From the NCBI GenBank assembly GCA_002104945.1, contig MCFH01000063.1, forward strand, positions 1 to 64,000: a stretch of 64,000 bases of DNA, written 5' to 3'. Under the pieces are notes generated by a model. It searched no databases and was not told where the DNA came from. It worked only from the letters and a program-made list of their open reading frames with translations. The position numbers were made by a program, and so were the translations under genes. The first letter of the stretch is position 1, and each line of letters begins with the position of its first letter. Origin of the DNA: Piromyces finnis finn (Eukaryota; Fungi; Neocallimastigomycota). Positions 5,675 through 62,359 of the stretch are shown piece after piece.

Positions 5675-7503
5675 TTTTATTTTTATTGGTTTCTTTTTAA
5701 TGTATTTTTTCTTGAATTTTCTTTTATAAATAAAAATATATTTGTTTTCTTTTAAAAAAAAAAGATTGACTTATTCTATCAAAAAATAATAGGTATTTTC
5801 TATTTTTAATTGAAATGTTTAAAAAAAATATTATTTAAATGTATTATTGTCATACTATTAATAATTGTAATTATAAAGCTTATTAGAATTTTATTTATTT
5901 ATTTATTTATTTTTAAAAACTATAAGCTTTTTATTTTTATATATATTTTTTTAATTATTACTTTAATCGTATTGTTTTTCCTAATTTTTTTTTTTTTTAA
6001 GTAATAATTATTTATTTATTTTTAAAATCAGTCTAATAGTATTTAAACTCAAAGTACTAAATATCATGAGTATTTTGTTTTTTAATTTTATTTTATTTTA
6101 TTTTATTTTATTTTATTTATTTTTTTTTTTTTTTTTTTTTGACTTTTTTTAATAGTAATGCTATTTTTTTGATTTCATAATACTATGAATTTATGAATTT
6201 TAATTATAATAATAAAATGTTCAATACAATTTTCTTATTTGTATTCTATAGTATTATTGTTGATTTTTACCATTATTTTTTCGTATTGCTTTTTTTAAAA
6301 AAGAAGCAATAATCCTATTGTTTTTTCTTCTTTTTTTTACAAAAAAAAAAAACAAACTAGGATAACTAAATTTTGGAAGCTAAGCTAATAATGAATACAA
6401 AAATAAATTTTCTATTTTCCTAGAAAGAAAAAAAAAAAAGAAGGTCACTTGGAACATTTTCAAAGTTTAAATATAAAAAAGAAAATCTAAAATAAATTAA
6501 AAATTAAATTAAAAAAAAAAAAAAAATACATCCTCACAACAATACTATTGATTTATTTAATATATAATAAATTAATTCATTTATATTATATAATTATTTA
6601 TTAATTATTACTATTACATTCATTTAAATTTAATAGAAAAATGGATTTATTTATTATCTATAATTTAATATTTCCACAATTTATTTATTATTCTATTCAT
6701 GGATAACAATTTATTGGTAATATATTATATCAATTTATTGTCAATATATTAGAATTATGTCTGATTATTTTGATAATAAATGGATATTAAAATTGTTTTT
6801 TACTATTATTTGATTTTTACATATATTATAGTGTAGTACAATATGTTATTATCATATATTATTAATTGGTAAATCTTAATATTAGCCAAAGTTTGGAATT
6901 TTAATTATAATTTTATTTTTATATTAAATTGATTTCAATTAATTAATTAATTCATGTTTCAAATTAATTTATTTTTTTCCATATATAATTATATTCTAAA
7001 TAAGAATAATACATTAGCATCATATATTACTAATTTATTTTATATAGTAGTACAAAATATATTCTAAAAAAAAGTTTTAAAAATTAAATACAGAAATCTT
7101 AAAATTTATAGAATGACTTTCTTTTATATAAAAATCCTATGTTATAGTATCGAATCGAATTGATATGGTATACATATATAGTTAGAGTGTAGATACATAT
7201 CTACATTCTAACTATAATACATATAATAAATGATGATTTAATGAGTACTTATTATATGAGGTTATTTTTACTTTAGCTTCATTTAACCTGGTTTAATTAT
7301 CCTTTTACTATTATTCTTTTTCTCCTTATTACATAGATAATATTATCTGTAGGATAATTTATTATTATTAACGTGTAACTTGATAAAATTATGACTTTTA
7401 AGTATTATAAAGATTAACACAAATGATTGTAACACAAAATCATGTTTTTTTTATATTATTATTATTATAATATATCAATAATCATCATAATAGTAACAGT
7501 TAC

Positions 7504-7743
7504 AGTAATCGGTCGGTAATAGTAATAGTAATAGTAATCGGTAATAGTAATAGTAATAGTAATAGTAATAGTAATAGTAATAGTAATAGTAATAGTAATA
7601 GTAATAGTAATAGTAATAGTAATAGTAATAGTAATAGTAATAGTAATCGGTAATAGTAATAGTAATAGTAATAGTAATAGTAATAGTAATAGTAATAGTA
7701 ATAGTAATAGTAATAGTAATAGTAATAGTAATAGTAATAGTAA
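7504..7743. repeat. (AGTAAT)n hexanucleotide array with CGGT interruptions
   Basis: Direct reading, about 40 units. Confidence 0.95.
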
Positions 7744-10196
7744 TAATTTATTTATTTATTTTTTAAAGTAACAACATTTTTTTATTTTACTATTATGATT
7801 ATTATTATTATAAGCTAAGCAATTAATATCCTAATATTATGTATTATTATTATTTTCCCATTGGAATTAATAAATAATAGTATTATAATCACCTCTAAAA
7901 ATTACCAATATTAACTATTAAAATGGGAAAATAGTATAAAAAATTATGATTTGCATTTTAAAAATAACTTTAAAAAAAGTAAAGCTCATCAGAATAATAA
8001 AAATAAACTTTTGATCTTTAGAATTGAAGTTACACTTTTTTAGTTTTAAAATGTATGTCTATGCCTTGCGCACTTTTCTTAGTGACCATTAAATTAAAAT
8101 AATTAAATTGAATAGAAATCTACTATTTAAAACTATATATAAAATAATACTTTATATTTCTATGTACACCTTTTCTTTTTATACTCCATAGTCATTTTAA
8201 GCATAGAAACAATAATAATTATTGAAATGAAAGAAGGGCTAAATTATAAAAATCAGCCTTGAATAATTATAATACAAATTTATGTACATATATTAACTAT
8301 ATTAAATATATTATGTATTATATTCCATATTTCAATAGAATCTAAAATAATAGTAATTATATAGTATTACTATAAAATTAATATATTTAATAATATTATA
8401 ATTCATCATCATATATTATTTTGGTTACATATTACAAAACATTCCTTTTTAATATAATAGATATATTATAATATATTATTATATATTACTATTTAATATA
8501 TATTTAATTTATTCCATATGGTCAATTTAATTAGAAAGTCGGAAGTATATGGACATACAAAAAAATAAAGTATTCACTAGGCATTATTTTTTTACTATTT
8601 ACTATGAGCTTTTCCTTTTATTAGTATTAAACTTTTTATAATTTATAATGTGTCTTTTTTTTTATTTTGTGGTTGTTGTTGATAAATGAAATTGTTTTTT
8701 TATTACCATGCCAATTTAGTTATTCTCTTTTTTTTTTTTATTCTTTTTTTTATAGAAATTAGGATTAAATATTAATAAAATATTAATATTTTTAGTATTC
8801 TTATTTATCATCATAATAATAAATCTTTTATAGAATAAAGAATAATAAAGAATAATACGATTTCATTAATAATGAATACTATTCTATTCATCATGAATAC
8901 GATTTCATTAATCTATTATATAATTATTCTTTTTTCTTTTATTTTATTATTATAGTAATTTGAATAGCTTCGCTTCTTTTTTTCTTTATTATATTAAATT
9001 AAAAGAATGATGACCATGAAAAAAGAATATAAATTTTAAATTATTTTAATTAATTTTATATTAAAATTTTAATAAAAAGAATTTTGACCTTTTTTTAAAT
9101 TCATATGAAAAAGTTAAGCTTTTTTCATTCCTTCAATCTAATTTAATAAGGAAAAAAAGCTGTTCCCTTTATTATTATTTCATAGTTCATTGTATGGAAA
9201 AAAGAATTTTTTAGGTTTATTTTTATATTTTATTACTACAGCATAGCCCTAGTAGTTTATTAAAAAAAAAAATCCCTTATATTTTCAACATGTATGTTTT
9301 ATAGAAATGAAAAAAAGGGTGAAAACTAATTATTTATACATCGATTTAATATATAATTAATTTATGATTATATTTATTTATTTAAATAGCATTATATATT
9401 AAAATTTAATTGTATTTTGATAATTATTTAAATTGTGCTAAAAAGGAAATATTCATTTATAAAGTTTTTTTATCATATTAAAATTTCTATAAATGGATAT
9501 AAATAAATTAAAAGATATTTTTTCAGCCCTAATAAAAATAATATATTAATCTCATAAATTATAATGTAATGTAATATATAGAAAATAGTTTCCATTTTTA
9601 GAAAAAAAGAATTTTCTATAAGATGATGAAACAAATCAAAAAATGAAAATAAATTGAAAATAAAACAAAAAGGGATGATAATAAAAAGAAACGGAAAAAT
9701 TTTATTTCTATTAATCTTTTGATATAAAATAATATATTATAGTTTATTCCAATATATTATATATAAAATTGGTATTGAAACGTTTTGTTACACCTCAGAC
9801 TTATGGAGTCTAATAACAAAAGGTTAAAAAGACTTTTCCATCATCAATTATCACTTACTAATTACATCTTTAAACGAAAGAAAGAAAGAAAGAAAGAAAG
9901 AAATAACTTAACTATAAAAAAAAGAAAGAAAAAAATTATATACATCAATATATAAATATAAAAAAAAAAAGAATTATATTAGTATGATAAATGTATCAAT
10001 CGATAATTAATAATGTTTTAGTTATGTTTTATTTTTCTTTATTATTTGTAACTATATAAAGATTGGCGTAAAAAAACTGGTCTGGCCAAATTTTGATAGA
10101 AAATAATATTTAAAACTTTTTTTTTTTTTTTTTTATGTTTCAAATTATTAAAATTTTATTTTATGGCGTATTTCATTTCATGAAAATATATATATA

Positions 10197-10230
<34 letters not shown>

Positions 10231-10677
10231 TTTATTAAAACCTTTTTATTATTTTTTTTCAATTCTTTCTTTAAATTATCTAATAGTGTCAAAAGAAGAA
10301 AAAGAAAAAAAAAAAAAAAAGTTCACTTTTAAATGTATTGAAATATATAAAATATATATATATGGATATATGGATAAGACATTATTATTAAAGAAAGGTA
10401 GAAATAGTAAAGAATTCATTTTTATTTTTAAATTTTTTTTTCTTAAGAACTAAACGGCTTCTTTTTAGTTTTTAAAAGCCGCTTATTTCCTTTAGTAAAT
10501 ATTTAAATTTATTGGATAAAAAGAAATAAATAATTAAAAAGAAAAAACGGCCTATTTTTTAATTCTATAAATTTTTAAAGTGGGTTTTTTTATAATTATT
10601 AGTAAGCATCATTTTATTTAATATTATAAATAACAATTGTATTTTGAGAGGAAAAAAAGAATTAATGAATGAAAAGA

Positions 10678-10771
10678 TTTTTTTTATTAACTTCTGAGTG
10701 CATTTCTTCATCAACCAGAGTAAGTCCAAATGGTAATTCTTAAAGAAATGTTAGCTCTTTCTTATTGCTTG
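10678..10771 (-). mobile_element. 5'-truncated SINE copy (3' ~85 nt plus A-tail) with ~10-bp TSD
   Basis: The minus strand AGCAATAAGAAAGAGCTAACATTTCTTTAAGAATTACCATTTGGACTTACTCTGGTTGATGAAGAAATGCACTCAGAAGTTAATAAAAAAAA aligns with the 3' end of the 12.4-12.95 kb element. It is flanked by TGAATGAAAA at 10666-10675 and 10770-10779. Confidence 0.8.
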
Positions 10772-12389
10772 AATGAAAAAGTATCCATAAAATACTAATA
10801 ATAATATTTAGTAAACAAAAAATTAAAATATAAAAGGTTAGGTTAAATTAAATAATTTAATTTTATAAACTTGATACTATTTTTTTAAAAAAAAGAAAAT
10901 GCGTTTTTTAATAGATTAAAAATTTGATGCTATTTTAAGTATGAATATAAATATTAGTATTATCATTGTCATTATTGTTATTGCTTTTTAAAAATATAAA
11001 TATGAATATTTTTATTTCTGTTGTTTTAAAATATACAAAACTTGTTATAAAATAAAGATGAATCAATGTGTACAATTTGATAATGTTAAAAAAAGCATTC
11101 AAGTATTTTGTGCTTGTTTTCGAATATATATAAAAATAAAAAGTCTTTAGTTATTAACATTTAAGAATATAATATATCTTTGGTAATTAATAATGATATA
11201 TATTGACAATAATAATAATAATAATAATAATATAAAAAAACCTTTATCTTAATTAGTTAATTTCAACAATAATAATCTAATCCTTAACAAGTTTAAAATT
11301 TAAATTTTTAAATAAAATGAAAATATTTTTTGGTTAAGTATGTATTATTATAAAAAATATAATAATTATAAAAATAAAAATTTTAATATTTTTAAGTAAA
11401 AAAAAAAAAAAAAACTTTTATAAAGGAAGTGTTTATTTTATAAATGTTATTGTTATTATAATAGATGAATAATAAATAGGTTATTCTTAATAAATAAAAA
11501 AATATAAAATTTTAATTATAAAGTTTTTATTTTTTAAATTATTCTACATAATAGATTACCTCAATTTGTATTTTATATAAAAAAAATTTAAACTTTTGGA
11601 TAGTAACAAGTTATTTTAATTGTAGCTATAAAATAAAATAATAATAAAAAAAAGATAATCTAATATAATTTATGAAAAACATCAACATTTTAACATTAAA
11701 TATATTAATGAATGGAGTATTTTAAAATAAATGATAATGGTTGTTTTAGTGTTATATTTTTCTTTCTCTTTTAGTCTTTTAGTATTTATATATTATATAT
11801 TTAAATATGGAATAATTTTAATAATCTAATAAATAAAATATTTTCAGCTAAATTACCATTATATATACTATTATTATATATAATATTATATATAATAGTG
11901 TTGTTTTAGTAAAAAATTATAGTAATAATTATATTACTATTCTAATATTATAATAATTATTCAATTTTGTAATTGATAATTATTATGAATTTTCATGATC
12001 TATCATTCTACTGTTTATTTGATTTATATTTATATACACATATAACATATATGACATTATATAACATATATAGTCATTTCTTTTTATGTTCATTATTTTT
12101 ATAATAATTTTTATTTATATTCATATTATTCCAGTAATCTATTATTATATATTTTAAAATGAATTATTTTTTTTCAATATTCTCCTGCATTCTAGTATAG
12201 TGATGTTTATACTTTCTATACTAATAATAGTTAAAGGAAAAAAGTAAGGAATAAAAAATAAATTCGTTTTGAAACTGAAGTGCAATATCATTTTTTATAT
12301 CCTTTTCACCATAAAGTTCTTTTTTTTTTAACTTGGCTTTATTCTATCTACCTTTACTGTTTTTTTTAATTTCAGCTACCTTTTAGTTA

Positions 12390-12953
12390 TTTCAGTCGTT
12401 CCAGTTTTTATCCTGGTTGTTAAGGCGTTTCCTTAGCATACATAAGGCTTCTGGTTCGACCCCGCAGATGTCAGTGCCTGTGGATTTTCCCACTGGGTTT
12501 GCCATGGGTTGGGTTATGATATTCAGGTAAGTATAAATGAACTTTCTAATTTACTACTATGATAATAACACTCGTCTAGCCGGCCTGAGAGGGTCTAGTG
12601 TACATGGTACATTCCAAATTAGAACTTAATAAGTGGTGACTTAGGCTATGCCAAAAACACATAATATTCCTTAATCAATTTAAGTGTAAACATTAGGGGG
12701 CGGTTGACACGTGATCAAATTGACTATAAGAGGCTTATCATTGTAGTTGTGAAATATCGTACAACGACATGCATCTAATGTACATGGATTAAGTGAGCGT
12801 CGAAGCTGAAGAAACAGTATGACAGACCAGGAGGGTCACAACCACCTAGCAATAGGAATGAGCCAACGTTTCTCTAAGAACCACCATTGGAGCTAACTCT
12901 GATCGATGGGAGAAATGCACTCGGAAGTTAAAAAAAAAAAAAAAAAAAAAAAA
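12390..12953 (+). mobile_element. Putative tRNA-derived SINE (~560 bp)
   Basis: GC-rich island in ~85% AT DNA. It has a B-box GGTTCGACCCC at 12453-12463, a D-loop-like TGGTTGTTAAGGCG upstream, a 24-nt poly(A) at 12930-12953 and a second 3' copy at 10.7 kb. The 5' boundary is approximate and no TSD was found. Confidence 0.7.
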
Positions 12954-49772: not shown

Positions 49773-52024
49773 CGTAATATCTAATTTTTTTAAAATCATA
49801 ACTATTAATTGTATTTATAATAGACTTGGGTAAAAGTGTTGGTTTTCCATCATTATATAATATATTACATTCAAAACAGAAAAATAAAACAGTAGATAAT
49901 TTGTATGATAGCAGTTGTTGGAGACCAGAAGGTATTCATATAATTAATTAATTATTTTTTTCTTTTCAAAGTATAAAATTTAAATTTTTATTTACTTCTA
50001 ATTCTTTTTTTTTTTTTTAAGGTATTTTAATTTCTTCATTTTGTGAACATTCCTCTAAAATTAATCAATTAAGTATATCGTCGGATAATGCATTTTTTGC
50101 TTCTTGTTCTAATGATGGTACATTAAAAATTTGGGATTGTAATCGATTAGAAAAAAATGTTACTAATCGTTCTCGTTTAAATCATTATCAAGGTAAAAAA
50201 AAAAAAAAAAAAAAAAAGAAATATAAATAAAAAATATATAAATTATTATTATTATTATTTATTTATCAATTTTTTTTATATAAATAATAATAAATTATAT
50301 TTAATATTTTTAGGTGGAAATGTTACTAGTATTTCATTTTGTGAAAATAGACATAGTATTATTTCTGCTTCAGATAATGGCACAATTCATGTTTCAAGGT
50401 AAAATGAATAAAGCTAATTATAATTATATTTTTATTTAATAAGTAATAATTATATAGCATATTAATATATTATTTTTTTTTAAAATAAAACTAGAATTGA
50501 ATATATGAATGCAGGTGGTCATTTGAAATATGGAAAATTTGAAAGAGTAAGAGAGATGATTTTAGAAGATGGAGAATATATAACAAATATTAATCACTAT
50601 AATACAGGTAATGTTATATTTAGATTTTTTTTTTTCAATAATTTATATTTTCATTATACAAATAAAAAATTAAAATATTATATTATATCAATAGAGTTAG
50701 AATCAGTAGTAGTAATGTCATCATCTCAAGGAAGTATATGTGGATTTGATTTGAGAACAATGAAAATTGTATGGAAATTAGATGCTTCTCCAAATTTTGG
50801 TAATTATTTCTATAAATTTAAAAATTTTTTAATTTTTTAACTTCATTATATTTATATATTTATATAATTAAAAAATATATTTAATGTTTTATAAGGTTAT
50901 GTATCCTCTTTTGCTGTTAATCCATCTAATTATTGGCTGTGTAGTGGAACATCAAAGGGTGTAATGACCCTTTGGGATATTCGTTTTTCATTACCAGTTA
51001 GTACATGGGCACATCCAAGTATGGAAAAAATAAATAAAATGAAATTATTCCCATCAAGTACTTCATCGACAGATAAGAATTATTTAAATGAATCAAAACA
51101 AGTTATTTGTGCTGTTGATAATGATAATAATGAATTATCTGCATGGAATGTGGAAACTAAAGAATGTACAGAAATTTGGTATTCTGGAAGATATAATTCA
51201 TCAAGATCATTCTATGAAAATGGTATTACTGTAAGTCCAAAAAATATTAATTTTTAATCCATTCAATAAATATATTGGAATATAATTTAGAATATAATTT
51301 AAATAATATATATAATATATATTAAAATAACACTAAAATACTTTTTTTCTTTCTTTTTCAAAAAAAAAAAAAAAAAGGCTGTCGAGCCAGAAACATCATC
51401 TATATTACCATCAATTCATAATGTCAACACTAAAAAATATAAAAATTCTGTAAATTCATTTACCTTTTTGGATAATTCTAATTATTATAGTTTCTTTAAA
51501 ATGCAGTTACCATTTATTATTTCAGTTGGTTCTGATAAACGTATTCGTTATTGGGATCAATTGAATGTAAATAGATCAATGATTTTAAATGGTGTGGAAA
51601 TGACAGATCAAAATATTAATTATAAGTAACTTTTTCTTTTTTATTTATAATAAATAATCTTTTATTATATTTTTTTTTAGTTAATAAGATATTAAAATAT
51701 TATATAATTATATATAATTATATGTTTTTTTTTTTGCTATGGATTTTTTTTATTTTTATTTTTAGGACATATCAAAAGAATTCTACTGTAATTCATTCTG
51801 AATCATCTAATTTCGAATCATGTTCAACACTTACTTTAAATAGTTCCAGTTCTTCTCCAATAAATTCAATTGGCAATATACCTCTTCATTATGCTAATTA
51901 TAATGCATCTTCTAAAAAGCTAAATGGTCATATGGATACAATTACTGATGTTACCTATACTGTAGTTCCATATCCATTAATTATTTCTAGTGGAAGGGAC
52001 GGAATAATTAATATATGGAAATAA
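42414..52024 (+). CDS. VPS15: Vps15/PIK3R4 (kinase domain, HEAT repeats, WD40), >30 exons
   Basis: Spliced start [29 protein letters not shown]; RISTRPFL; [53 protein letters not shown]; HEAT region; WD40 exons ending [13 protein letters not shown]-stop. GT-AG phase was checked for the 5' exons only. Confidence 0.93.
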
Positions 52025-52677: not shown

Positions 52678-53029
52678 TTATTTATCATTGAATCCTCCCA
52701 TGTTACTGTGTTTATTATTAGCATTCATTTTTGTATTGATTGGAGGATCATTGGTAAGAATTTTACCATTTTTCCATTTTACTCCACAAGCATTGCAAAG
52801 AGTGCTTTTGCCTTCAGGCCCTCTACGCCAAATAGGTGTTGATGTACATTTACAATATGCACAGAATTTTGTAGTTCCATTATTATTATTATTATTATTA
52901 GTTATTGTTGATGTAGTATTACTATTACTGCTATTATTGTTATTATCATTATTATTATCATTATTATTTTTAGCATTATTGATATTATTGTTATTATCAT
53001 TATTATTTTCATTATTATTTTTAGCATTA

Positions 53030-53063
<34 letters not shown>

Positions 53064-53080
53064 CATCATCATCATTATTA

Positions 53081-53163
<83 letters not shown>

Positions 53164-53165
53164 GC

Positions 53166-53202
<37 letters not shown>

Positions 53203-53275
53203 GTTATTATTATTATTATTATTATTATCATTATTATTACCATTATTATTACTATTATTATTACTATTACTATTA

Positions 53276-53309
<34 letters not shown>

Positions 53310-54939
53310 CATCATTATTATTATTATTATTATTATTATTAAAAGATGTATTATTTTGATTATTTAAGGAAGCATTGGTTGGAGGTGTAAGGGAATAAAA
53401 AGGTGAGGATGCATTTTGATAATGACTATTTAATGAACCCACTTGTCCAGAGGTCATTACAGTAGTTTCATTAGAAATTGTAGTTGATTCCATCAGTGAC
53501 GAATTCTTATTTTTATTGTGAAGATTTTTATTTAATGGGTATTTTGATGGGATTTTCATTATATTTTTTGAAGATTTTGCTACTTTTCCTAATATATGTT
53601 TACTATCCATATCAGTATTATCAGAATTCAGTTTTCTCTTTTGTATCTTTAAAATATTGTTATTTCCACCGCTATTCATATTACTATTACCAGAATAATC
53701 ATTCACTTTTTGAATTGAAGAAATTTCTATTATTTCCGGCATACTCATTTCAGCCTTTAGTTTTATATATTAAAATATAATAATAATAATAATAATGATA
53801 AAGTAATAAAACATATAAGTTTATGCTATTTAATAAACTTGAAAATAAAATAAACAATATTGTAGGTATTTAATTAATTATGTTAATTTAATATAAAGAG
53901 TATTCATTACTTCAAATATTTCTTCATTTTCAGAATTCACTTGAAATTCATCAAATTGAAAATTAAAAATCATAATATTTTTATTTGGTATATTTAACTA
54001 GTGTTTTTTTTTTTAATTTAAATATTTTTAAATAAAATATATTAATTATTTTATTGAAATTTATGTATATATATAGCGTATTATTAAATTACTTGATTAA
54101 TATTGCTGAAATCCTGATTTTGGGTATAGTTATCTAAATAATTATTTATTGTATCAAGTAACAGTTTCGAAGCACCACATATTAACAAGGTATTATTTTC
54201 TTGGTTATTTTCATTACTATTGCTATTACCATCACTACCATTATTAATATTATTGTTGCCATTATTTGATGTTTCCATGGATATAATTATCTTTGTTATT
54301 ATTTTATTAATTTTTGAGTAGAATAAAATTTTTTGTATTGAGAAAGTTATTAATTTATAATAAATAATATTGAATATAATTACAATAAAATTATATACTA
54401 TTTTTAGTTATTTAAATATGCATATACATACTTCATGTGGTTCTGTTATAGTTAATGATTGTGCAACTGACTTTTTTGGGAATATAAAATAGTATTTTTT
54501 ATTTTCAACAATTTCAAAAATTATTTCGTAATCATCAGCCGATTCATTTTTATTATTACTTTCTTTTTTTACACTATTACTTTGAGATATAGAACTTGAA
54601 GAAGAATTAGAATTTAATCCAAATAAATTTTTATTGAATTTATAAAAGTGGGTATTTGAGTATATATATGGACCAAAAATTATTTTAGCTTTTCCTAGAG
54701 AAGTAATATCTTTACTATTTTCAATATTCAATGGATAATTAAACTTTTTAAATAAATAATTATTAAATACTTGGCTACATTGCATTTGACTAGTAGTTTC
54801 TAAAATTATAAAAAATTGTACATAAATTTATTAATTTGAATTTTATTTTAACATTTTTTTTTCAAATAATAATAAAAAAACAGTTTATTATATTGTTAAT
54901 TTTTATATTCTTTCAAAAGATTATATGACATTTACCCAT
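52678..54939 (-). CDS. GATA zinc-finger transcription factor (C-x2-C-x18-C-x2-C) with long poly-Asn/Asp tract: complement(join(52678..53754,53911..53997,54093..54290,54432..54799,54936..54939))
   Basis: [31 protein letters not shown]. Exons are phase-compatible. The 4-nt first exon is speculative; an alternative start is at 54785. Confidence 0.8.
52920..53340 (-). repeat. Coding (AAT)/(GAT)n tract encoding ~140 Asn/Asp residues
   Basis: Direct reading. Confidence 0.95.
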
Positions 54940-55464: not shown

Positions 55465-55817
55465 ATGGACTTTTCAGATGATGAAGTGATGGACCCATTT
55501 GAAATAAGAAATCTATTTACTGATATGATATCTAAATTGACTTCTTCACAACAATCAGTAACAAATGCAGCAATGTTTGCAATGCAACATAAGAAATCTT
55601 ATGAATTGTGTTATGAAATCTTAATAAATGAAATAAAAAAACAGGTTGGTTTTTAAAATTTTGCATATAATTTTAATTAAAATCCTATTTTTTAAATTCG
55701 AAATTTAGAAATGTCAAATAATAATAATAATAATAATAAATTTGTTGAGAATATACATTAATGGGATCTAATTTTCTATCTTTCTATCTTTCTATTTTTC
55801 TTTCTTTCTTTCTTTCT

Positions 55818-55854
<37 letters not shown>

Positions 55855-58105
55855 AAGCCAATACCAGCAAGATTAAATATATTTCATGTTCTGGATTGTA
55901 TATGTAGAAATTGTTTAAAATTCAATTTTAGAGGATATATTGAACTACTTAAAGATGATTTAACTTCAATAATATTCGATATTGCACCTGAAAATAATCC
56001 CAAAGGTGATGCCAATGTTAAGAATGTCAGAAAGGTAGTATTAATTTTTAAAATACATCAACATTTTCAATGCATTTTCTTTTCAATACTATATAGATTT
56101 TTATAATAAATAAATAGAAATTAAAAAGTATTTAAAAAATAATATCATTTGTATTAGGCTTTAAGAGGTTGGAGAGATAAGCATTTTTTTGAAGATGAAA
56201 CGCAATTAATAATAATATACGACCAACTTTTGAAACGTGAACAACGCTATGATGAAAAACAGTTAATTATTTAATTTTTCATTTTCGAATTTAATTTATA
56301 ATAATGTAAAATTTAATTATTAAAATTTTGAAAAATTTATTTTTTCATGTAATTGTTACTTTAGTAAAGCTAAACAGAAGGTTAAGAACGAAGTTACTAA
56401 AAGAATAGAGGAAGATAGAGTAAAAGTAAATAATCAATAATTAGTTTTTAAAAGTATATCTTTAATTATGTTGAAGATTCAAATTTAAAATGTTCAATAA
56501 TTATATAATTTATTAATAAATAATTATATAACTTATTAATTATGAATAGCAAAAGAAGAGAAAAGAGAATGCATGGATATTAACTTCGGAGATGGATGAA
56601 TTTTCATATTATTGGGATAATTTACCACCATATTCATCGTTAGATTGTAATGACATAATTACCGAAAATAAAATTTTTTATCATAATAATTATCCAGATA
56701 TTACTAATGAACAAATATTACGAGTATTTGATAGAAAAGAAATTGAAGAAAAATTAATATCAAAACCTATTGTATATAATAAAAAAAGTAATGAAGAGGA
56801 AAAAGATTCCTATTATCAACAAGGAAGAAATTATGATTCTCATAATAGTCCTCGGAAACGCACAAGAACAGAAAAAGACAGAGAATCATATGATTATAAC
56901 GATGATCAATATAAAAATAAAAATAACAAAGATTATGAAAGTGATCATAAACATGACAGAGACAGTAAATATAATAAAAACGATAAAAATGATAAATATG
57001 AAAGAGATAGAGAAAATAAATATGATAAATATGATAGAAATGCTAAATATAATAGAGACAATCAATATAACAAGGCAATTAAGTCTGAAAGAGATAAATA
57101 CGATAGAGATAGAGATAGTAAGTATGATAAACAAGACGATTACAATCGAAATGATAAATACGATAAACGAGATAGATATAATGAGGATGAAGAAAAAAGA
57201 TCAGAAAAATATAATAAAATTGAAAAATATTCACCATCAACAAATATTTCAATCAAACCTAAAAGTAAAAATCGTATATTTGTTTGGGATTTAGATGAAA
57301 CTTTAATCTGTAAGTTAATATTTATTTACAAAAAAAAAAAAAAAGTTTAATAGTGTAGTTAAATTTTATGATTATAACTATGCATAATGTATTCTAATTC
57401 ATAATATAAACTTTATTAAGTATTCAAGTCATTATTAGATGGAAATTGTATGGAAATAAAATCTCAAGATAGAGATTTGGGTGTTGTTGCTGGAAAGAAA
57501 ATAATGAAATGGATAATAAGTATATCAGAAAATTATTTTCATTATAATGATATTGAAGAAGTCGATGATCCTTCAAATTTATCAATATATGATGACATAC
57601 CGTTGGATGTTGATTTACGGTATATATTTATTTATTGTATATAATAATATTTATAAATATTTATTTCTATTTATATATAAATAATACAATCATCTGATAT
57701 TTTAAATTATTATAATATATAAATAAACTTTCATTATCAAAAAGAACTTATGATTTCAAAGATAATATAAATAATGTACCTAGTAATTCAAGACTTTTAT
57801 CAAGACTATTATCTTATAGATATAAATCCATAAAGAGAAAATATGACTCCAGTTTATTCAGAGGTATTAATTATTTATATACCAAATACCAATTATTTAT
57901 TTTTTTATTCAAATCATTATATATTAAATTAATATTTATATTTTATTTTATAATATGTATTGTAATAAATTTTTTTTTTTTTTTTTTTTAGATAATATTA
58001 AAGATATTGATCTTATTGACAAGGTTTATGATGATATTGATAATTTAAGTCACCAATGGCTAAGTTTTATGCTTTCTTTATTAGATGGTGTAAAATTAAG
58101 GTAAT

Positions 58106-58137
<32 letters not shown>

Positions 58138-58797
58138 CATTTCTTTCTTTCTTTTATATATATTTACATATTATTTAATTTGATAAATATAATTCATATA
58201 TATTAATAGTTTTTTTTTTTAATATTATTTGAAAAAAAATTAAAACTTTAGTGGTTCTTATGGTAAAGCCGCAGATTGTGTATTAGTATCTGCTGGTCAT
58301 TTAATCCCAACATTAGCAAAATGTGTAATTTATAAATTAAATACTGTTTTTACAAGTGATAAAGTATGGAGTTCATCCAGAAATGGCAAAGATTGGTGTT
58401 TTAAACAAATAAAGAAAAAATATGGAGATAATTATGATTATATTGTTGTTGGAAATAGCAATGAGGTATGCTTATTTATATAATGTTTATTATAATATAT
58501 ATTAAGTTTAAATAATAATAAAATTAATGTTTATCATTTTATTTTATTTAAATATGAAATAATTATTATTAAATAATTCTTATTCATTATATAAATGTAA
58601 AATTAAATATAAAAGGAAAAAATTGCAAGTGAAAAGGTATTATTTATTTATTTATTTATTTATTAATTAATTAATTAAATTTATAAATTAATTTACTAAT
58701 TCATTATAATTTATAATGATAGAATAACTGGACTTTTTTCAAAATTATCGATAAAAGGTCATTAATAGAATTTAATCAATTATATATTCATTCATAA
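55465..58797 (+). CDS. CTK3-EYA: Ctk3 (CTDK-I gamma)-Eyes absent phosphatase fusion protein, 670 aa, 11 exons: join(55465..55644,55858..56034,56158..56261,56365..56419,56550..57309,57421..57619,57745..57863,57992..58100,58252..58465,58616..58636,58723..58797)
   Basis: All introns are GT-AG and phase-compatible; total 2013 nt. The N-terminus has Ctk3 motifs MDPFEIR, ANVKNVRK and KRIEEDR..RKENAW..EF...WD. The C-terminus has EYA motifs RIFVWDLDETLILFKSLLDG, YNDIEE, TYDF, RLLSYRY, WL, LIPTLAKCVIY, GKDWCF and YIVVG. Confidence 0.85.
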
Positions 58798-59071
58798 AAT
58801 AAGTAAATAATTAAAAAAAAAAAAAATATTAAAAGGAAAAATAGAAGAGATCAATTAAATATTATACAAAATTAAGACGATTGTATCAACTTATAAATAA
58901 ATATTATTTACAATTTTTTTTAATATTAAACCGTCATAACTATATTATAAACTAGACAATATTATATAAATGAAAAAAAAAAAAAAAATTATATAATATT
59001 AATATACCATTATAATAATATAAAAGTAAAAAAAAAAATAAAAAAAAATAAAATTAATTTATTAATTAAAA

Positions 59072-59540: not shown

Positions 59541-62359
59541 ATGGTAAGAAGACTAAATAAAATATAATGCAAAATAATATTTTATTATAAACATATAAAA
59601 AAATAATACATACATACATGCATAATACAATAAGATTAATATATAATTTTGTGTGTTAAATTATGATTTAGTCGAATGAATGTGTAAAAGTTGTTGTAAG
59701 ATGTCGACCATTTTCAGAAAAAGAAAAAGAAGCTGGACATGCAAATATTATTAAGATAAATAAGGAATCAGCATCAGTTGAATTAAAAGATCCAAAATAT
59801 ATATTAAACAATGCCAATGCTAGTAATAACAATATTAATAATGAAGAAATTGAACAAACTAGTAAAACATTTACTTTTGATAATGTATTTGATCAAGATA
59901 CTACCCAATTAGAAGTATATAATTCTACTGCAAGACCTATTGTTGATTCAGTTTTGGAAGGATATAATGGAACTATTTTTGCCTATGGTCAAACAGGTAC
60001 AGGAAAAACATTTTCTATGGTAGGTGACCGAAGTAAAAAAGAATTACGTGGAATTATACCCAATGCTTTTGATCATATTTTTTCATATATTGGTCGTGGT
60101 GGACCAGATAAAAAGTATTTAGTTCGTGTAAGTTATTTAGAAATTTATAACGAAACTATTAAAGATTTATTAAAACCAAAATCAGGAAAACTTGAAATAA
60201 AAGAAAGTACAGAAATTGGTCTGTACGTTAAAGATTTATCAAATTTTGTTGTTAAGGATGTACAAGAAATGGATAGATTAATGACGGTGGGAAATAAAAA
60301 TAGAAGTACTGGAGAAACACAAATGAATGCTCATTCTTCACGTTCTCATTCTATTTTTACAATTACAATTGAAGCAAGTGAACTAGACAGTGATGGACAA
60401 GAACATATTCGTGCTGGTAAACTTCATTTAGTAGATTTAGCTGGTAGCGAACGTCAAACAAAGACTGGTGCCACTGGTGATCGATTAAAGGAAGCAACAA
60501 AGATTAATTTGTCATTATCTGCATTAGGTAATGTTATTTCAGCCTTAGTTGATAGAAAGTCATCCCATATTCCATATCGTGATTCAAAACTTACTAGACT
60601 TTTACAAGATTCTCTTGGTGGTAATGCTAAAACAGTTATGATTGCAACTCTCAGTCCTGCCAGTTATAACTATGATGAAAGTTTATCAACACTTCGTTAT
60701 GCTAATAGAACCAAAAATATTAAGAATAAACCTAAAGTTAATGAAGATCCAAAGGTAAAGAAAATATATACTTTATTAAATATTTTTTTTTATAATAAAT
60801 GTATTTTATATAAAAGATTTTATATAAAATCATAATAACAATCATTATAACTATAATGAAAATAATATATAAATAAAATAAACTTAACAGGATGCATTAT
60901 TACGTGAATTCCAAGAAGAAATTAAAAAACTTAAAGAACAACTTGAAAAGATGGAAAATGGAGATGAAGAAAATGTTATTGAAAACGTTGAAGAAATTGT
61001 TGAAGAAGAAGAGGAGGAGGAAGAAGAAGAGGAAGTAGAAGAAGAAGGTGATGAAAAGAATTCTTCAGCTCCTCGTAATACCACTAAGAAGTCTAAAAAG
61101 AGTTCAAAAAAAAAGAAAGAGGATAAAAAAAGTCAAAAGAAAGTTAACTTTCCAAATTCAAAATTATCTGAAAAGAAACTTAAAGAAATTCAAGAAAAAG
61201 GTAAATATATATATATATATATATATATACATAGAACAATAAAGAAATTATAACTATAAATTTATATAATACCAAATTTACAAAATATTTAAAATATTTC
61301 TATATATTTATCTCATATACTAATTAATCAATATTATCAATATGATTATATTTTAAAACATTTGTCTTTAATAATAACAATTTTACTTTAAATATATTCT
61401 AAAAATAAAATAAAATGGTAGTACAAGCTGAAAAAGATCGACTTCTTAATGATAAGAATATTATTGAATCTGAAAAGGTAAAATACCTATCAGAATTGGA
61501 AGTTCGTGCTAAGGAATTAGAAAAGGAACGTGAAGCTAGAGATGAAATAGAAAAGAAATTATCGCAGATGGAAGCAAAATTGTTAGTAGGAGGTGTTAAT
61601 ATTTTAGATAAAAATGAAGAACAACAAATTATATTAGCAAATCAAGCTAAAGAGTTAGAAGAAAGAAGAAGACAAGAAAGATTACTTCAGGAGTCCATTC
61701 AAAATCAAGAAGAAGCACAATTTCAAATTGAAGAGAATTATAATTCCTTACAAGAAGAAGTAACGGAAAAAACGAGAAAACTTAAAAAATTGTTTTCTCT
61801 TATGATGACAAAGAAAAATGAAATTAAAGAATTAAGAGAAGAATATCAACAGGAAAGAGAAGACTTAACCGACACCATTAGAGAATTAACTAGAGAATTA
61901 AAATTGAAATTTTTAATAGTAGAAAATTATCTTCCAGAAGAGCAATTACGTTGGATTGAAGAGTCAGCGAAATATGATGAAGCTACTGATAAATGGCGGA
62001 TTTTACATATTGCTCATGCTGGTAACAATATTCATGGTAAAAAAGGCTTACTAAGTAATGATCCATACAGTGAAATGATATCTATAAATAGTAAAAAAGG
62101 AAATAATAATAATTTATATAATAAAATGAATCCTGAATCAATCTGGGATCCATATTGTGTTTTCCCTGATCCATATTTAGTTTACGATCGTAAACTCTCA
62201 AAGAATATAAGTAAAAGTCGTAAAGCTCGTCCTTCTAGTGTTAAAAAGACATTAGGTTCAAGTTCACTTTCCTATAGAAAGAATTTTGAAGAAAATAATG
62301 AACAAATAGATGCACCAAAAGCAAGAGGATTAGTTGCTAAAACGAAACACTATGCATAA
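59541..62359 (+). CDS. KIF3: Kinesin-2 (KIF3A/KIF3B/FLA10-like) motor, 777 aa: join(59541..59543,59672..60754,60891..61200,61422..62359)
   Basis: VKVVVRCRP; P-loop GQTGTGKT; NAHSSRSH; DLAGSER; [20 protein letters not shown]. The kinesin-2 stalk [43 protein letters not shown] is present. Confidence 0.92.

What the first reader, a model, noticed from the sequence alone, without database searches (positions are those of the whole stretch)
55465..58797. Ctk3-Eyes absent fusion: a Pol II CTD-kinase subunit joined to an EYA-type HAD phosphatase in a fungus
Seen in sequence: eleven phase-compatible exons give one 670-aa protein. Exon 5 (56550-57309) runs without a stop from the Ctk3 C-terminal motif (QKKRKENAW..DEFSYYWD) through a charged linker into RIFVWDLDETLI, so the fusion does not depend on a doubtful splice. 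The next six exons follow the animal EYA domain motif by motif to the C-terminus. Established: Ctk3 is the fungal CTDK-I subunit (with Ctk1/Ctk2, Ser2 kinase) and carries a CID-like fold. EYA domains are Mg-dependent DxDxT tyrosine phosphatases described mainly from animals, plants and some protists, and yeasts lack them. Inference: this lineage may tether a tyrosine-type phosphatase to the CTD Ser2 kinase complex, for example coupling Ser2 phosphorylation to removal of CTD Tyr1-P or another elongation mark. I know of no description of this architecture.
Basis: partly seen in the sequence, partly recalled or inferred. Interest (0 to 1): 0.9.

Follow-up and report, generated by a model that had tools for sequence, protein, structure and literature searches.

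The report
Ctk3-like domain fused to EYA phosphatase
An anaerobic gut fungus makes one spliced messenger RNA encoding a protein that joins a Ctk3-type domain (a part of the kinase complex that marks the tail of RNA polymerase II) to an Eyes-absent-type phosphatase, and the same undescribed combination is kept in related gut fungi, in Rozella and probably in some distant protists.

Summary
RNA contigs from three runs confirm all ten introns. Exon 4 ends at 56425, not 56419, so the protein has 672 aa, not 670. One 1609-nt RNA contig runs from exon 1 to exon 7, covering the Ctk3 part and the first half of the EYA domain.

Exons 1 and 2 match Pfam CTK3 above threshold and, in the PDB, match only S. 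pombe Ctk3 (5ce7). Exons 6, 7 and 9 match the EYA model TIGR01658 in order. The spliced C-terminus matches EYA proteins at about 1e-39.

The catalytic DxDxT, Ser and Lys residues are present. The motif IV Asp is Asn (GNSNEE) in all three gut fungi, as in 7 of 106 aligned EYA domains.

Two other gut-fungal genomes carry the same gene, and both halves are under purifying selection (dN/dS about 0.1). Piromyces sp. E2's public annotation shows only a 69-aa fragment of it.

The architecture is not confined to this lineage. It occurs in Rozella allomycis and in an unidentified eukaryote (P0034). Ancoracysta has CID+EYA, and Plasmodiophora probably has a related form.

I found no paper describing it. 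The EYA tree gives no sign of recent transfer. The function, a phosphatase tethered to the CTD kinase or Pol II machinery, is inferred and untested. This scan has not noted it before on other DNA.

The parts
55465..55644 (+). Exon 1 (aa 1-60), start of the Ctk3-type CID-like domain. MDPFE at aa 9-13 aligns with residue 1 of S. pombe Ctk3.
   Evidence: Pfam CTK3 41.2 bits, profile 1-51. Its only PDB hit is 5ce7 Ctk3. RNA contigs start at 55486/55488.
55858..56034 (+). Exon 2 (aa 61-119), second half of the Ctk3-type CID-like domain.
   Evidence: Pfam CTK3 35.8 bits, profile 56-112. Its only PDB hit is 5ce7, residues 56-111. The junctions are in RNA contigs.
56158..56261 (+). Exon 3 (aa 120-154), end of the CID-like domain (LRGWRDK helix).
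   Evidence: The 56032/56156 and 56261/56365 joints are in X2-X4. It aligns with P0034, Rozella and Plasmodiophora.
56365..56425 (+). Exon 4 (61 nt), start of the CTK3_C-like helix (..RIEEDRVK).
   Evidence: The joint 56425->56550 (GT..AG) is present in three runs, and the contig has 61 nt between exons 3 and 5.
56550..57309 (+). Exon 5 (aa 175-427). It holds the CTK3_C-like motif (QKKRKENAW..DEFSYYWD), the low-complexity K/D/N/Y/R linker with the NLS-like SPRKRTRTEK (aa 274-283), and EYA motif I (FVWDLDETLI, aa 418-427; Asp421 and Asp423).
   Evidence: It is a single open frame and is fully covered by X2 contig 8. The linker contains imperfect 9-nt repeats. The orthologous exon is open in L003 and L007.
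57421..57619 (+). Exon 6, EYA domain (after motif I, start of the helical cap).
   Evidence: TIGR01658 24.9 bits, profile 16-68. The 57309/57421 junction is in X2 and X4 contigs.
57745..57863 (+). Exon 7, EYA domain.
   Evidence: TIGR01658 16.9 bits, profile 83-118. The joint 57618/57744 is present in three runs.
57992..58100 (+). Exon 8, EYA domain.
   Evidence: X3 contig 12 and X2 contig 9 join it to exons 7 and 9. It is 83-86% identical in L003 and L007.
58252..58465 (+). Exon 9, EYA catalytic core: motif II Ser583, motif III Lys616, and motif IV GNSNEE (Asn638 where EYA2 has Asp).
   Evidence: TIGR01658 59 bits, profile 179-241. PDB EYA2 1.3e-10, with alignment.
58616..58636 (+). Exon 10, a 21-nt microexon (EKIASEK).
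   Evidence: RNA contigs of X2-X4 carry these letters between 58466 and 58721 (table 5c).
58723..58797 (+). Exon 11 with the stop codon, C-terminal end of the EYA domain. The 3' UTR extends to at least 58950.
   Evidence: X4 contig 15 covers 58721-58950. It is 83% identical in L003.

Best explanation
This is one real, conserved gene of anaerobic gut fungi. Its 672-aa product has three parts. The first is a Ctk3-family module: a non-canonical CID-like helical domain followed by a CTK3_C-like helical motif. The second is a fast-evolving charged linker with an NLS-like basic patch. The third is a complete EYA-type HAD phosphatase domain with the nucleophile and general-acid Asp (D421, D423), T425, S583 and K616, plus E641/E642. 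The usual Mg-binding Asp of motif IV is Asn.

The most likely mechanism is inferred, not shown. The Ctk3 module docks the protein onto the Pol II elongation machinery. In yeast that module holds Ctk3 in the Ctk1/Ctk2 Ser2 kinase complex. Docking would bring the EYA phosphatase next to the CTD or to the kinase itself, and it would remove a phosphate there, most plausibly phosphotyrosine such as CTD Tyr1-P.

The architecture is old and inherited rather than a recent accident, because Rozella and an unidentified eukaryote have it and two distant protists have look-alike forms.
For: Single transcript:
- Spliced RNA contigs from three runs carry every junction.
- One 1609-nt contig spans exons 1-7.
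- Word depth is similar over both halves.

Ctk3 identity:
- Pfam CTK3 is above its cut-off on exons 1 and 2 and scores higher than CID.
- Both exons hit only 5ce7 (S. pombe Ctk3) in the PDB, collinearly.
- The motif IEEDRxxxKxxR...(D/E)xFxxxW(D/E) is shared with P0034 and Rozella. Those regions match Pfam CTK3_C weakly, at 20.5 and 15.9 bits.

EYA identity:
- TIGR01658 matches three exons in order.
- The spliced C-terminus scores 1e-39 to 1e-28 against many EYA proteins over about 250 aa.
- Catalytic columns are conserved.
- The AF2 model of the homologue P0034 superposes on the EYA2 ED at TM 0.94-0.96. Its N-domain matches 5ce7 best among CID folds.

Selection and conservation:
- Syntenic orthologues exist in L003 and in Piromyces sp. 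E2 (L007), each with an open exon 5.
- dN/dS is 0.08-0.14 for the Ctk3 part, 0.12 for EYA and 0.20-0.35 for the linker.

Wider distribution: P0034, Rozella, Ancoracysta and Plasmodiophora.

Tree: the fungal sequences lie outside the animal, plant and oomycete clades. In the 36-row tree they sit with animals (SH-aLRT 86), and a window+P0034+Rozella clade is not rejected (p-AU 0.43).
Against: - No experiment or interaction data links this protein to Ctk1/Ctk2 or to Pol II.
- S. pombe Ctk3's CID-like domain is deposited as 'non-canonical' (5ce7 title). From my recollection of the 2015 structure paper, it did not bind CTD peptides, so direct CTD binding is doubtful.
- CTK3_C was not detected on the window's own pieces, because the motif is split by intron 4. 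It is below Pfam's cut-off in the homologues.
- I could not check whether the genome also has a separate Ctk3 gene, so this may be a paralogue rather than the CTDK-I subunit.
- Asn638 replaces a Mg2+ ligand, which could weaken or abolish catalysis.
- Tyrosine specificity is assumed from animal and plant EYA.
- The Ancoracysta and Plasmodiophora similarities to the fungal N-module are weak: hhalign 6% and 73%.
Confidence: 0.55

Rival explanations
1. A generic CTD-reader phosphatase. The N-terminal domain works as a CID that binds the Pol II CTD directly, and the protein acts alone as a cis version of the RPRD1-RPAP2 arrangement. It would not be a subunit of the Ser2 kinase complex.
For: Ancoracysta's relative has a canonical Pfam CID (42 bits) in front of EYA. 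P0034 keeps the helix-4 Y-L-I-D-S motif typical of CTD-binding CIDs, and its N-domain also superposes on the Rtt103 CID at TMt 0.58. Pfam CID also scores on exon 1 (21.7 bits) and on P0034 (38.1 bits).
Against: CTK3 outscores CID on every fungal member. The PDB searches return Ctk3 only, with no Pcf11, Nrd1, Rtt103 or SCAF8. The gut-fungal sequence has His, not Tyr, in the helix-4 motif (HVLDC), and Rozella has Asn. The conserved CTK3_C-like motif has no role in CTD reading in known CIDs.
Confidence: 0.2
2. A built-in regulator of the kinase rather than of the CTD. The EYA domain, held in the CDK/cyclin complex by the Ctk3 module, dephosphorylates the kinase or cyclin itself, as Cdc25 does for CDK inhibitory tyrosine, or another elongation or chromatin factor such as a histone H2A-type tyrosine.
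For: The anatomy is the same as in the best explanation. From general knowledge, animal EYA acts on H2AX pTyr142, so chromatin substrates have precedent. Nothing in the sequence singles out the CTD as the substrate.
Against: There is no evidence for any specific substrate. Inhibitory tyrosine phosphorylation of Ctk1/CDK12-type kinases is not established in fungi, as far as I know.
Confidence: 0.12
3. A pseudophosphatase or scaffold. In gut fungi the EYA fold is kept for binding, as a phospho-substrate trap or protein-protein module, and has little or no catalysis because the motif IV Asp is Asn.
For: GNSNE replaces GDGxE in all three gut-fungal genomes. The corresponding Asp of EYA2 is a Mg2+ ligand, from general knowledge of HAD enzymes. 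96 of 106 aligned EYA domains have Asp at this position.
Against: All other catalytic residues are intact, including both Asp of DxDxT, and the domain is under strong purifying selection at dN/dS 0.12. The same Asn occurs in 7 of 106 EYA domains, including the cnidarian Cladonema Eya. P0034, Rozella, Ancoracysta and Plasmodiophora keep Asp.
Confidence: 0.1
4. An annotation or assembly artefact: two neighbouring genes (a Ctk3 and an EYA) that the exon model has joined wrongly.
For: Piromyces sp. E2's public annotation shows only a 69-aa CTK3 fragment and nothing for the EYA part. Contigs assembled from short RNA reads do not prove a single molecule.
Against: Exon 5 is a continuous open frame that holds both the Ctk3_C-like motif and EYA motif I in three genomes. 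Spliced RNA contigs bridge exons 1-7 and 7-11 with equal depth. Intronless transcript-derived P0034 and the Rozella gene model encode the same fusion.
Confidence: 0.03

Closest known systems
Ctk3 / Lsg1, gamma subunit of the yeast CTD Ser2 kinase CTDK-I (Pfam PF12243 + PF12350; PDB 5ce7)
   Same: The N-terminal roughly 125 aa match the CTK3 profile end to end and match S. pombe Ctk3 from its first residue (MDPFE). A basic helix plus an acidic-aromatic motif follows, placed where CTK3_C sits. Lsg1 is the third subunit of the S. pombe Ser2 kinase (PMC3171476).
   Different: Yeast Ctk3 ends after the C-terminal helical bundle at about 220-300 aa. Here a 195-aa linker and a 260-aa phosphatase follow. 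CTK3_C is only sub-threshold in the homologues. Association with Ctk1/Ctk2 is untested.
Eyes absent (EYA1-4, Drosophila Eya), animal transcription co-activator and HAD tyrosine phosphatase (TIGR01658; PDB 3geb, 3hb0, 4egc)
   Same: The whole EYA domain is present, including the helical cap and motifs I-III. Identity over about 250 aa is 28% to a fish EYA2 and 37% to a plant EYA, the two I measured. The homologue model superposes on EYA2 at 1.4 A.
   Different: There is no Pro/Ser/Thr-rich transactivation N-terminus. A Ctk3 module takes its place. Motif IV has Asn instead of Asp. No SIX partners are expected in fungi.
Plant and protist stand-alone EYA phosphatases (for example Chenopodium XP_021765675, Aphanomyces)
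   Same: They are the best full-domain matches to the window's EYA part (P0104, 37% identity, E 8e-40) and lie outside animals.
   Different: They consist of the EYA domain only, at about 270-345 aa, with no N-terminal module.
CID-scaffolded CTD phosphatases (RPRD1A/B with RPAP2; Fcp1/SCP as DxDxT CTD phosphatases)
   Same: The logic is the same: a CID-fold domain brings a phosphatase to the Pol II machinery. Fcp1/SCP show that DxDxT enzymes act on the CTD. This comparison rests on general knowledge and was not tested here.
Rozella allomycis EPZ31782.1 / A0A075ATC6 (P0123) and the uncultured-eukaryote protein P0034
   Same: The order of parts is the same: Ctk3-like domain, CTK3_C-like motif, linker, EYA. 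These are the nearest things to true family members.
   Different: Their linkers are much shorter (437 and 513 aa in total), and they keep Asp in motif IV. Both carry only automatic names, and I found no study of them.

Membership tests
Ctk3 family (CTDK-I gamma subunit) | N-terminal non-canonical CID-like domain matching Pfam PF12243 above its gathering score | tested here: met
   Exon 1 scores 41.2 bits and exon 2 scores 35.8 bits against a cut-off of 23.7, at collinear profile positions 1-51 and 56-112. CID scores lower. The only PDB hit for each exon is 5ce7.
Ctk3 family (CTDK-I gamma subunit) | C-terminal helical bundle (Pfam PF12350 CTK3_C) | tested here: inconclusive
   The window's pieces give no hit, because the motif is split by intron 4. 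The aligned region of P0034 scores 20.5 bits and that of Rozella 15.9 bits, both below the 25-bit cut-off. The motif is shared in the alignment.
Ctk3 family (CTDK-I gamma subunit) | Physical subunit of a Ctk1 (CDK) / Ctk2 (cyclin) complex and required for its activity | not testable with these tools
   This needs co-purification or complementation of a yeast ctk3 deletion.
Ctk3 family (CTDK-I gamma subunit) | Being the genome's Ctk3 orthologue, with no separate stand-alone Ctk3 | not tested
   Only the window and the fetched loci could be read. A word-limited profile search returned only the exon 1 fragments P0223 and P0224, which is not informative about a second gene.
EYA domain HAD phosphatases (TIGR01658) | Collinear match over the whole roughly 270-aa EYA domain | tested here: met
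   Exons 6, 7 and 9 hit profile positions 16-68, 83-118 and 179-241. The spliced C-terminus aligns over q6-260 with animal, plant and protist EYA at 1e-28 to 1e-39.
EYA domain HAD phosphatases (TIGR01658) | Motif I DxDxT (nucleophile and general acid), motif II Ser/Thr, motif III Lys | tested here: met
   WDLDET (D421, D423, T425), VLVS (S583) and GK (K616) are all present. These columns are 96-99% conserved in 106 EYA domains.
EYA domain HAD phosphatases (TIGR01658) | Motif IV acidic pair G-D-G-x-E-E (Mg2+ binding) | tested here: inconclusive
   The window has G-N-S-N-E-E. The Glu pair is kept and Asp is replaced by Asn in the window, L003 (P0001) and Piromyces E2. The same Asn occurs in 7 of 106 EYA domains, including a cnidarian Eya.
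EYA domain HAD phosphatases (TIGR01658) | Mg-dependent protein tyrosine phosphatase activity | not testable with these tools
   This needs an enzyme assay.
Animal Eyes absent co-activators (Eya-Six network) | P/S/T-rich N-terminal transactivation domain and partnership with SIX homeoproteins | tested here: not met
   The N-terminus is a Ctk3-type helical domain. The tree places the protein outside the animal clade. It is therefore an EYA-domain protein and not an Eya co-activator.
Canonical CTD-interacting domain (Pfam PF04818 CID) | CID profile match above its cut-off and the helix-4 Tyr..Asp CTD-contact motif | tested here: not met
   CID scores 21.7 and 14.2 bits on exons 1 and 2, below the 23.9 cut-off. 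The motif reads H-V-L-D in the window, against Y-L-I-D in P0034. The scores are on pieces, so the negative is soft.

The most novel reading that the evidence does not exclude
The Ctk3-EYA (CID-EYA) protein is the ancestral arrangement. Under this reading, an EYA phosphatase tethered to the Pol II CTD kinase or CTD machinery existed before fungi diverged, and possibly before the split of opisthokonts, Rhizaria and Provora. The 'yeast-specific' Ctk3 subunit of CTDK-I would be what remains after Dikarya lost the phosphatase half, and animals would have replaced the Ctk3 module with the Eya transactivation domain. That would make the original job of EYA a transcription-elongation one.
Probability: 0.2. 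Interest if true: 0.85.

Novelty: new variant of a known kind. Interest (0 to 1): 0.6.

Why it matters
Ctk3 is treated as a yeast- or fungus-specific accessory of the CTD Ser2 kinase. EYA is treated as an animal developmental co-activator whose phosphatase function outside animals is obscure. A conserved, selected and expressed protein that joins the two gives a concrete hypothesis for both. It suggests where non-animal EYA phosphatases work (the Pol II elongation machinery) and where Ctk3 came from. It also names a candidate for a tethered tyrosine phosphatase acting on the CTD code, where Tyr1-P erasers are poorly defined. The idea can be tested with recombinant domains and with yeast complementation, without needing genetics in gut fungi. 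On the practical side, the gene is badly under-annotated: in Piromyces sp. E2 only a 69-aa stub is on record.

Tried and rejected
- The spliced 672-aa protein could not be handed to the database tools by reference. Family scans were therefore run exon by exon, and the whole protein was compared locally only.
- Two word-index searches, with P0034 and with an alignment carrying the window's EYA exons, returned 13-14 hits and no gut-fungal full-length protein. I read this as poor recall combined with missing annotation, not as absence.
- MAFFT scattered the short exon pieces when they were aligned to full-length P0034, so A1 and A2 were discarded.
- The metagenome scan with Ctk3 exon 2 matched 230 patterns but none was confirmed. 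The allowed second scan was not used.
- The protein-atlas search showed only plant and animal EYA clusters, and no large cluster with the fusion.
- Run X1 gave only 21-26-nt low-complexity matches, so it is not evidence.
- The AU test on the 69-row tree did not finish. It was repeated on 36 rows with LG+G4.
- A suspected WW domain in the EYA protein P0159 was not supported by Pfam.
- HGT of EYA from animals or plants into gut fungi was considered and not supported. The fungal sequences are not nested in any donor clade, although deep branches are poorly resolved and long.
- In the AFDB fold search, organism names were blanked. A0A1Y2CHD6 (453 aa, aligned over query residues 78-507) and R0KT98 (385 aa, weak) look like further fusions, but I could not fetch or verify them.
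Full report
**Setting.** The window has 21.6% G+C. Earlier notes of this scan describe the genome as that of an anaerobic gut fungus. This fits the synteny I found with a Piromyces sp. E2 contig. The gene lies between a GATA-type zinc-finger gene on the minus strand (52678-53748) and a kinesin gene (from about 59954). The same neighbours flank it in two related genomes.

**The observation.** All have GT..AG borders, compatible phases and introns of 86-213 nt at 6-16% G+C.

Public RNA data settle the model. Four runs of the same organism hold 42-50% of the sampled words of the 3.65-kb stretch, which is about the exon share. In three of them (X2, X3, X4) the assembled contigs are spliced exactly at the predicted sites.
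- X2 contig 8 (1609 nt) covers exon 1 (from 55488), exons 2, 3 and 4, the whole of exon 5 (56550-57309), exon 6 and exon 7.
- Other contigs join exons 7-8-9 and exons 9-10-11, including the 21-nt exon 10.
- Word depth is alike over both halves.

The only correction concerns exon 4. The protein is therefore 672 aa, not 670. Run X1 gave only spurious 21-26-nt matches.

**Identity of the two halves.**

Ctk3 half:
- Pfam CTK3 (PF12243) matches exon 1 at 41.2 bits and exon 2 at 35.8 bits, against a cut-off of 23.7.
- The matches are at consecutive profile positions, and CID scores lower.
- Searched against all PDB sequences, each of these exons finds one entry only, 5ce7, the S. pombe Ctk3 N-domain. 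Exon 1 matches from residue 1 (MDPFE), and exon 2 matches residues 56-111.

EYA half:
- The EYA model TIGR01658 matches exons 6, 7 and 9 at profile positions 16-68, 83-118 and 179-241.
- Exon 9 aligns to human EYA2 at 1.3e-10.
- The spliced C-terminal 267 aa align over their whole length to animal, plant and protist EYA proteins at 1e-28 to 1e-39.

CTK3_C was not found on the window's pieces, because intron 4 splits that motif. The segment RIEEDRVKQKKRKENAW...DEFSYYWD (aa 167-197) does align with the regions of P0034 and Rozella that match PF12350. Those matches are weak, at 20.5 and 15.9 bits, below the 25-bit cut-off.

**Catalytic residues.** I aligned 106 full EYA domains.
- The window has WDLDET (Asp421, Asp423, Thr425), Ser583 and Lys616, together with Glu641 and Glu642.
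- The Asp of G-D-G-x-E-E is Asn638.
- The same Asn is present in the close relative (P0001, from L003) and in Piromyces sp. E2.
- Asn occurs at this position in 7 of the 106 domains, among them the Eya of the cnidarian Cladonema.

I therefore treat the substitution as a caveat and not as proof of inactivity.

**Conservation.** Locus L003, from a JGI metagenome, holds a syntenic orthologue with GATA upstream. L002 holds the same gene with kinesin downstream. L007 is Piromyces sp. E2 contig KZ151194.1.
- L003 contains matches to all the exons I compared, and L007 matches to all but three. Exons 2 and 3 were not recovered in L007, which contains 3590 N from assembly gaps, and exon 11 found no credible match there.
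- In both loci exon 5 stays open from the Ctk3_C-like motif to DLDETLI.
- By Nei-Gojobori estimates, dN/dS for the Ctk3 part is 0.14 against L003 and 0.08 against L007.
- dN/dS is 0.12 for the EYA part in both comparisons.
- dN/dS for the linker is 0.35 and 0.20. The linker also carries indels and imperfect 9-nt repeats.

Both domains are thus maintained by selection.

**Annotation status.** In Piromyces sp. E2 the public annotation has only a 69-aa protein, PIROE2DRAFT_16252, which corresponds to exon 1. Nothing is annotated over the remaining exons, and the kinesin model starts inside EYA exon 9. An exhaustive search of 1.84 billion cluster representatives with exon 9 gave a 91-aa ORF fragment as the only close hit. 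No full-length gut-fungal protein appeared. I could not see how the window's own genome annotates the gene.

**Distribution beyond gut fungi.** I searched the 150 listed representatives (of 182 significant hits), and later the added cluster members (193 proteins), with N-terminal profiles.
- Four clusters beyond the window's own combine an EYA domain with a Ctk3- or CID-like N-terminal region; those four are listed below.
- **P0034** (513 aa) comes from an intronless 1666-nt contig of a JGI sample at about 39% G+C. It has CTK3 at 48.9 bits, CTK3_C at 20.5 bits, EYA2 at 4e-47 and Ctk3 5ce7 at 1e-5.
- **P0123** is Rozella allomycis EPZ31782.1 (437 aa), with weak CTK3 and CTK3_C matches plus EYA.
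- **P0073** is from Ancoracysta twista (498 aa), with Pfam CID at 1.3e-10 plus EYA.
- **P0091** is from Plasmodiophora brassicae (545 aa). It has no Pfam N-domain, but hhalign gives 73% probability (E 3e-5) to the fungal N-module over the CTK3_C-like region. N-termini of other EYA proteins score near zero.
- An AF2 model of P0034 has mean pLDDT 76, above 90 in the EYA part and 60-82 in the N-domain. It superposes on the EYA2 ED at TM 0.94-0.96. Among CID folds it is closest to 5ce7 (TMt 0.61), then to Rtt103.
- The AFDB search hinted at further fusions, but organism names were not shown and I could not verify them. A0A1Y2CHD6 (453 aa) aligned over query residues 78-507, and R0KT98 (385 aa) matched weakly.

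**Origin.** In maximum-likelihood trees of the EYA domain, animals, green plants and algae, and oomycetes form supported clades. The window, P0034 and Rozella lie outside these clades on long branches. In the 36-row tree they fall in one group with animals (SH-aLRT 86), as opisthokont relationships would predict. A clade of the three is not rejected (p-AU 0.43). There is thus no sign of recent transfer. Deep resolution is poor, however, and composition is skewed.

**How it probably works.**
- Shown: there is one mRNA. It encodes a Ctk3-type module, a linker with a basic NLS-like patch (SPRKRTRTEK, aa 274-283), and an EYA domain with an almost complete catalytic set. Both ends are under selection.
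- Inferred: in yeast, Ctk3 (Lsg1 in S. pombe) is the third subunit of the CTD Ser2 kinase (PMC3171476). The simplest reading is that the module places the EYA phosphatase in or near that complex on elongating Pol II.
- EYA enzymes are phosphotyrosine phosphatases in animals and plants, by general knowledge. CTD Tyr1-P is therefore the obvious candidate substrate. The kinase or cyclin themselves, or chromatin proteins, are alternatives.
- The entry 5ce7 is titled a 'non-canonical CID'. By my recollection of the 2015 structure paper, which I could not retrieve, it did not bind CTD peptides. That favours docking through the kinase complex rather than direct CTD reading. Ancoracysta's canonical CID points the other way for that lineage.
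- I put about 0.55 on the tethered-phosphatase reading as a whole, and 0.95 or more on the gene and its architecture being real.

**Novelty.** Full-text searches found no paper for Ctk3 with 'eyes absent', or for EYA with 'CTD-interacting domain'. Searches on phosphatome, EYA and fungi found nothing on this point. The proteins sit in databases under automatic names such as 'protein-tyrosine-phosphatase' or 'hypothetical protein'. This scan had not recorded it before on other DNA.

Noticed in passing
L007 (Piromyces sp. E2 KZ151194.1) 7001-10070: The public annotation covers only exon 1 of this gene, as the 69-aa protein PIROE2DRAFT_16252. The remaining exons are unannotated. The neighbouring kinesin model (9988-12839) starts inside EYA exon 9 (9858-10070), so both models look wrong there.
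   Followed up: partly
window 52678-53748 (-): The upstream neighbour is an ORF for a GATA-type zinc-finger protein with a very long Asn/Asp homopolymer-like tract. The Pfam GATA label comes from the syntenic gene in L003, and the tract is read as poly-Leu or poly-Ile on the other frames.
   Followed up: no
window 59954-62359 (+): The downstream neighbour is a kinesin motor gene in several exons. It is syntenic in L002 and L007 and about 88% identical at the DNA level, much more conserved than the Ctk3-EYA gene.
   Followed up: no
window 58616-58636: A 21-nt microexon (EKIASEK) within the EYA C-terminal region is used in all three RNA runs.
   Followed up: yes
window 57252: Run X4's contig reads G where the window has A. 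This is probably a strain difference, and X2 and X3 agree with the window.
   Followed up: no
P0016 and P0042 (protist transcriptome proteins, 433 and 558 aa): These EYA domains are preceded by C2H2 zinc fingers. Outside animals, the EYA domain has therefore been joined to more than one kind of nuclear targeting module.
   Followed up: partly
window 50505-52024 (+): ORF fragments here probably belong to the WD40 / beta-propeller gene annotated at the syntenic place in Piromyces sp. E2 (L007 1557-3414).
   Followed up: no
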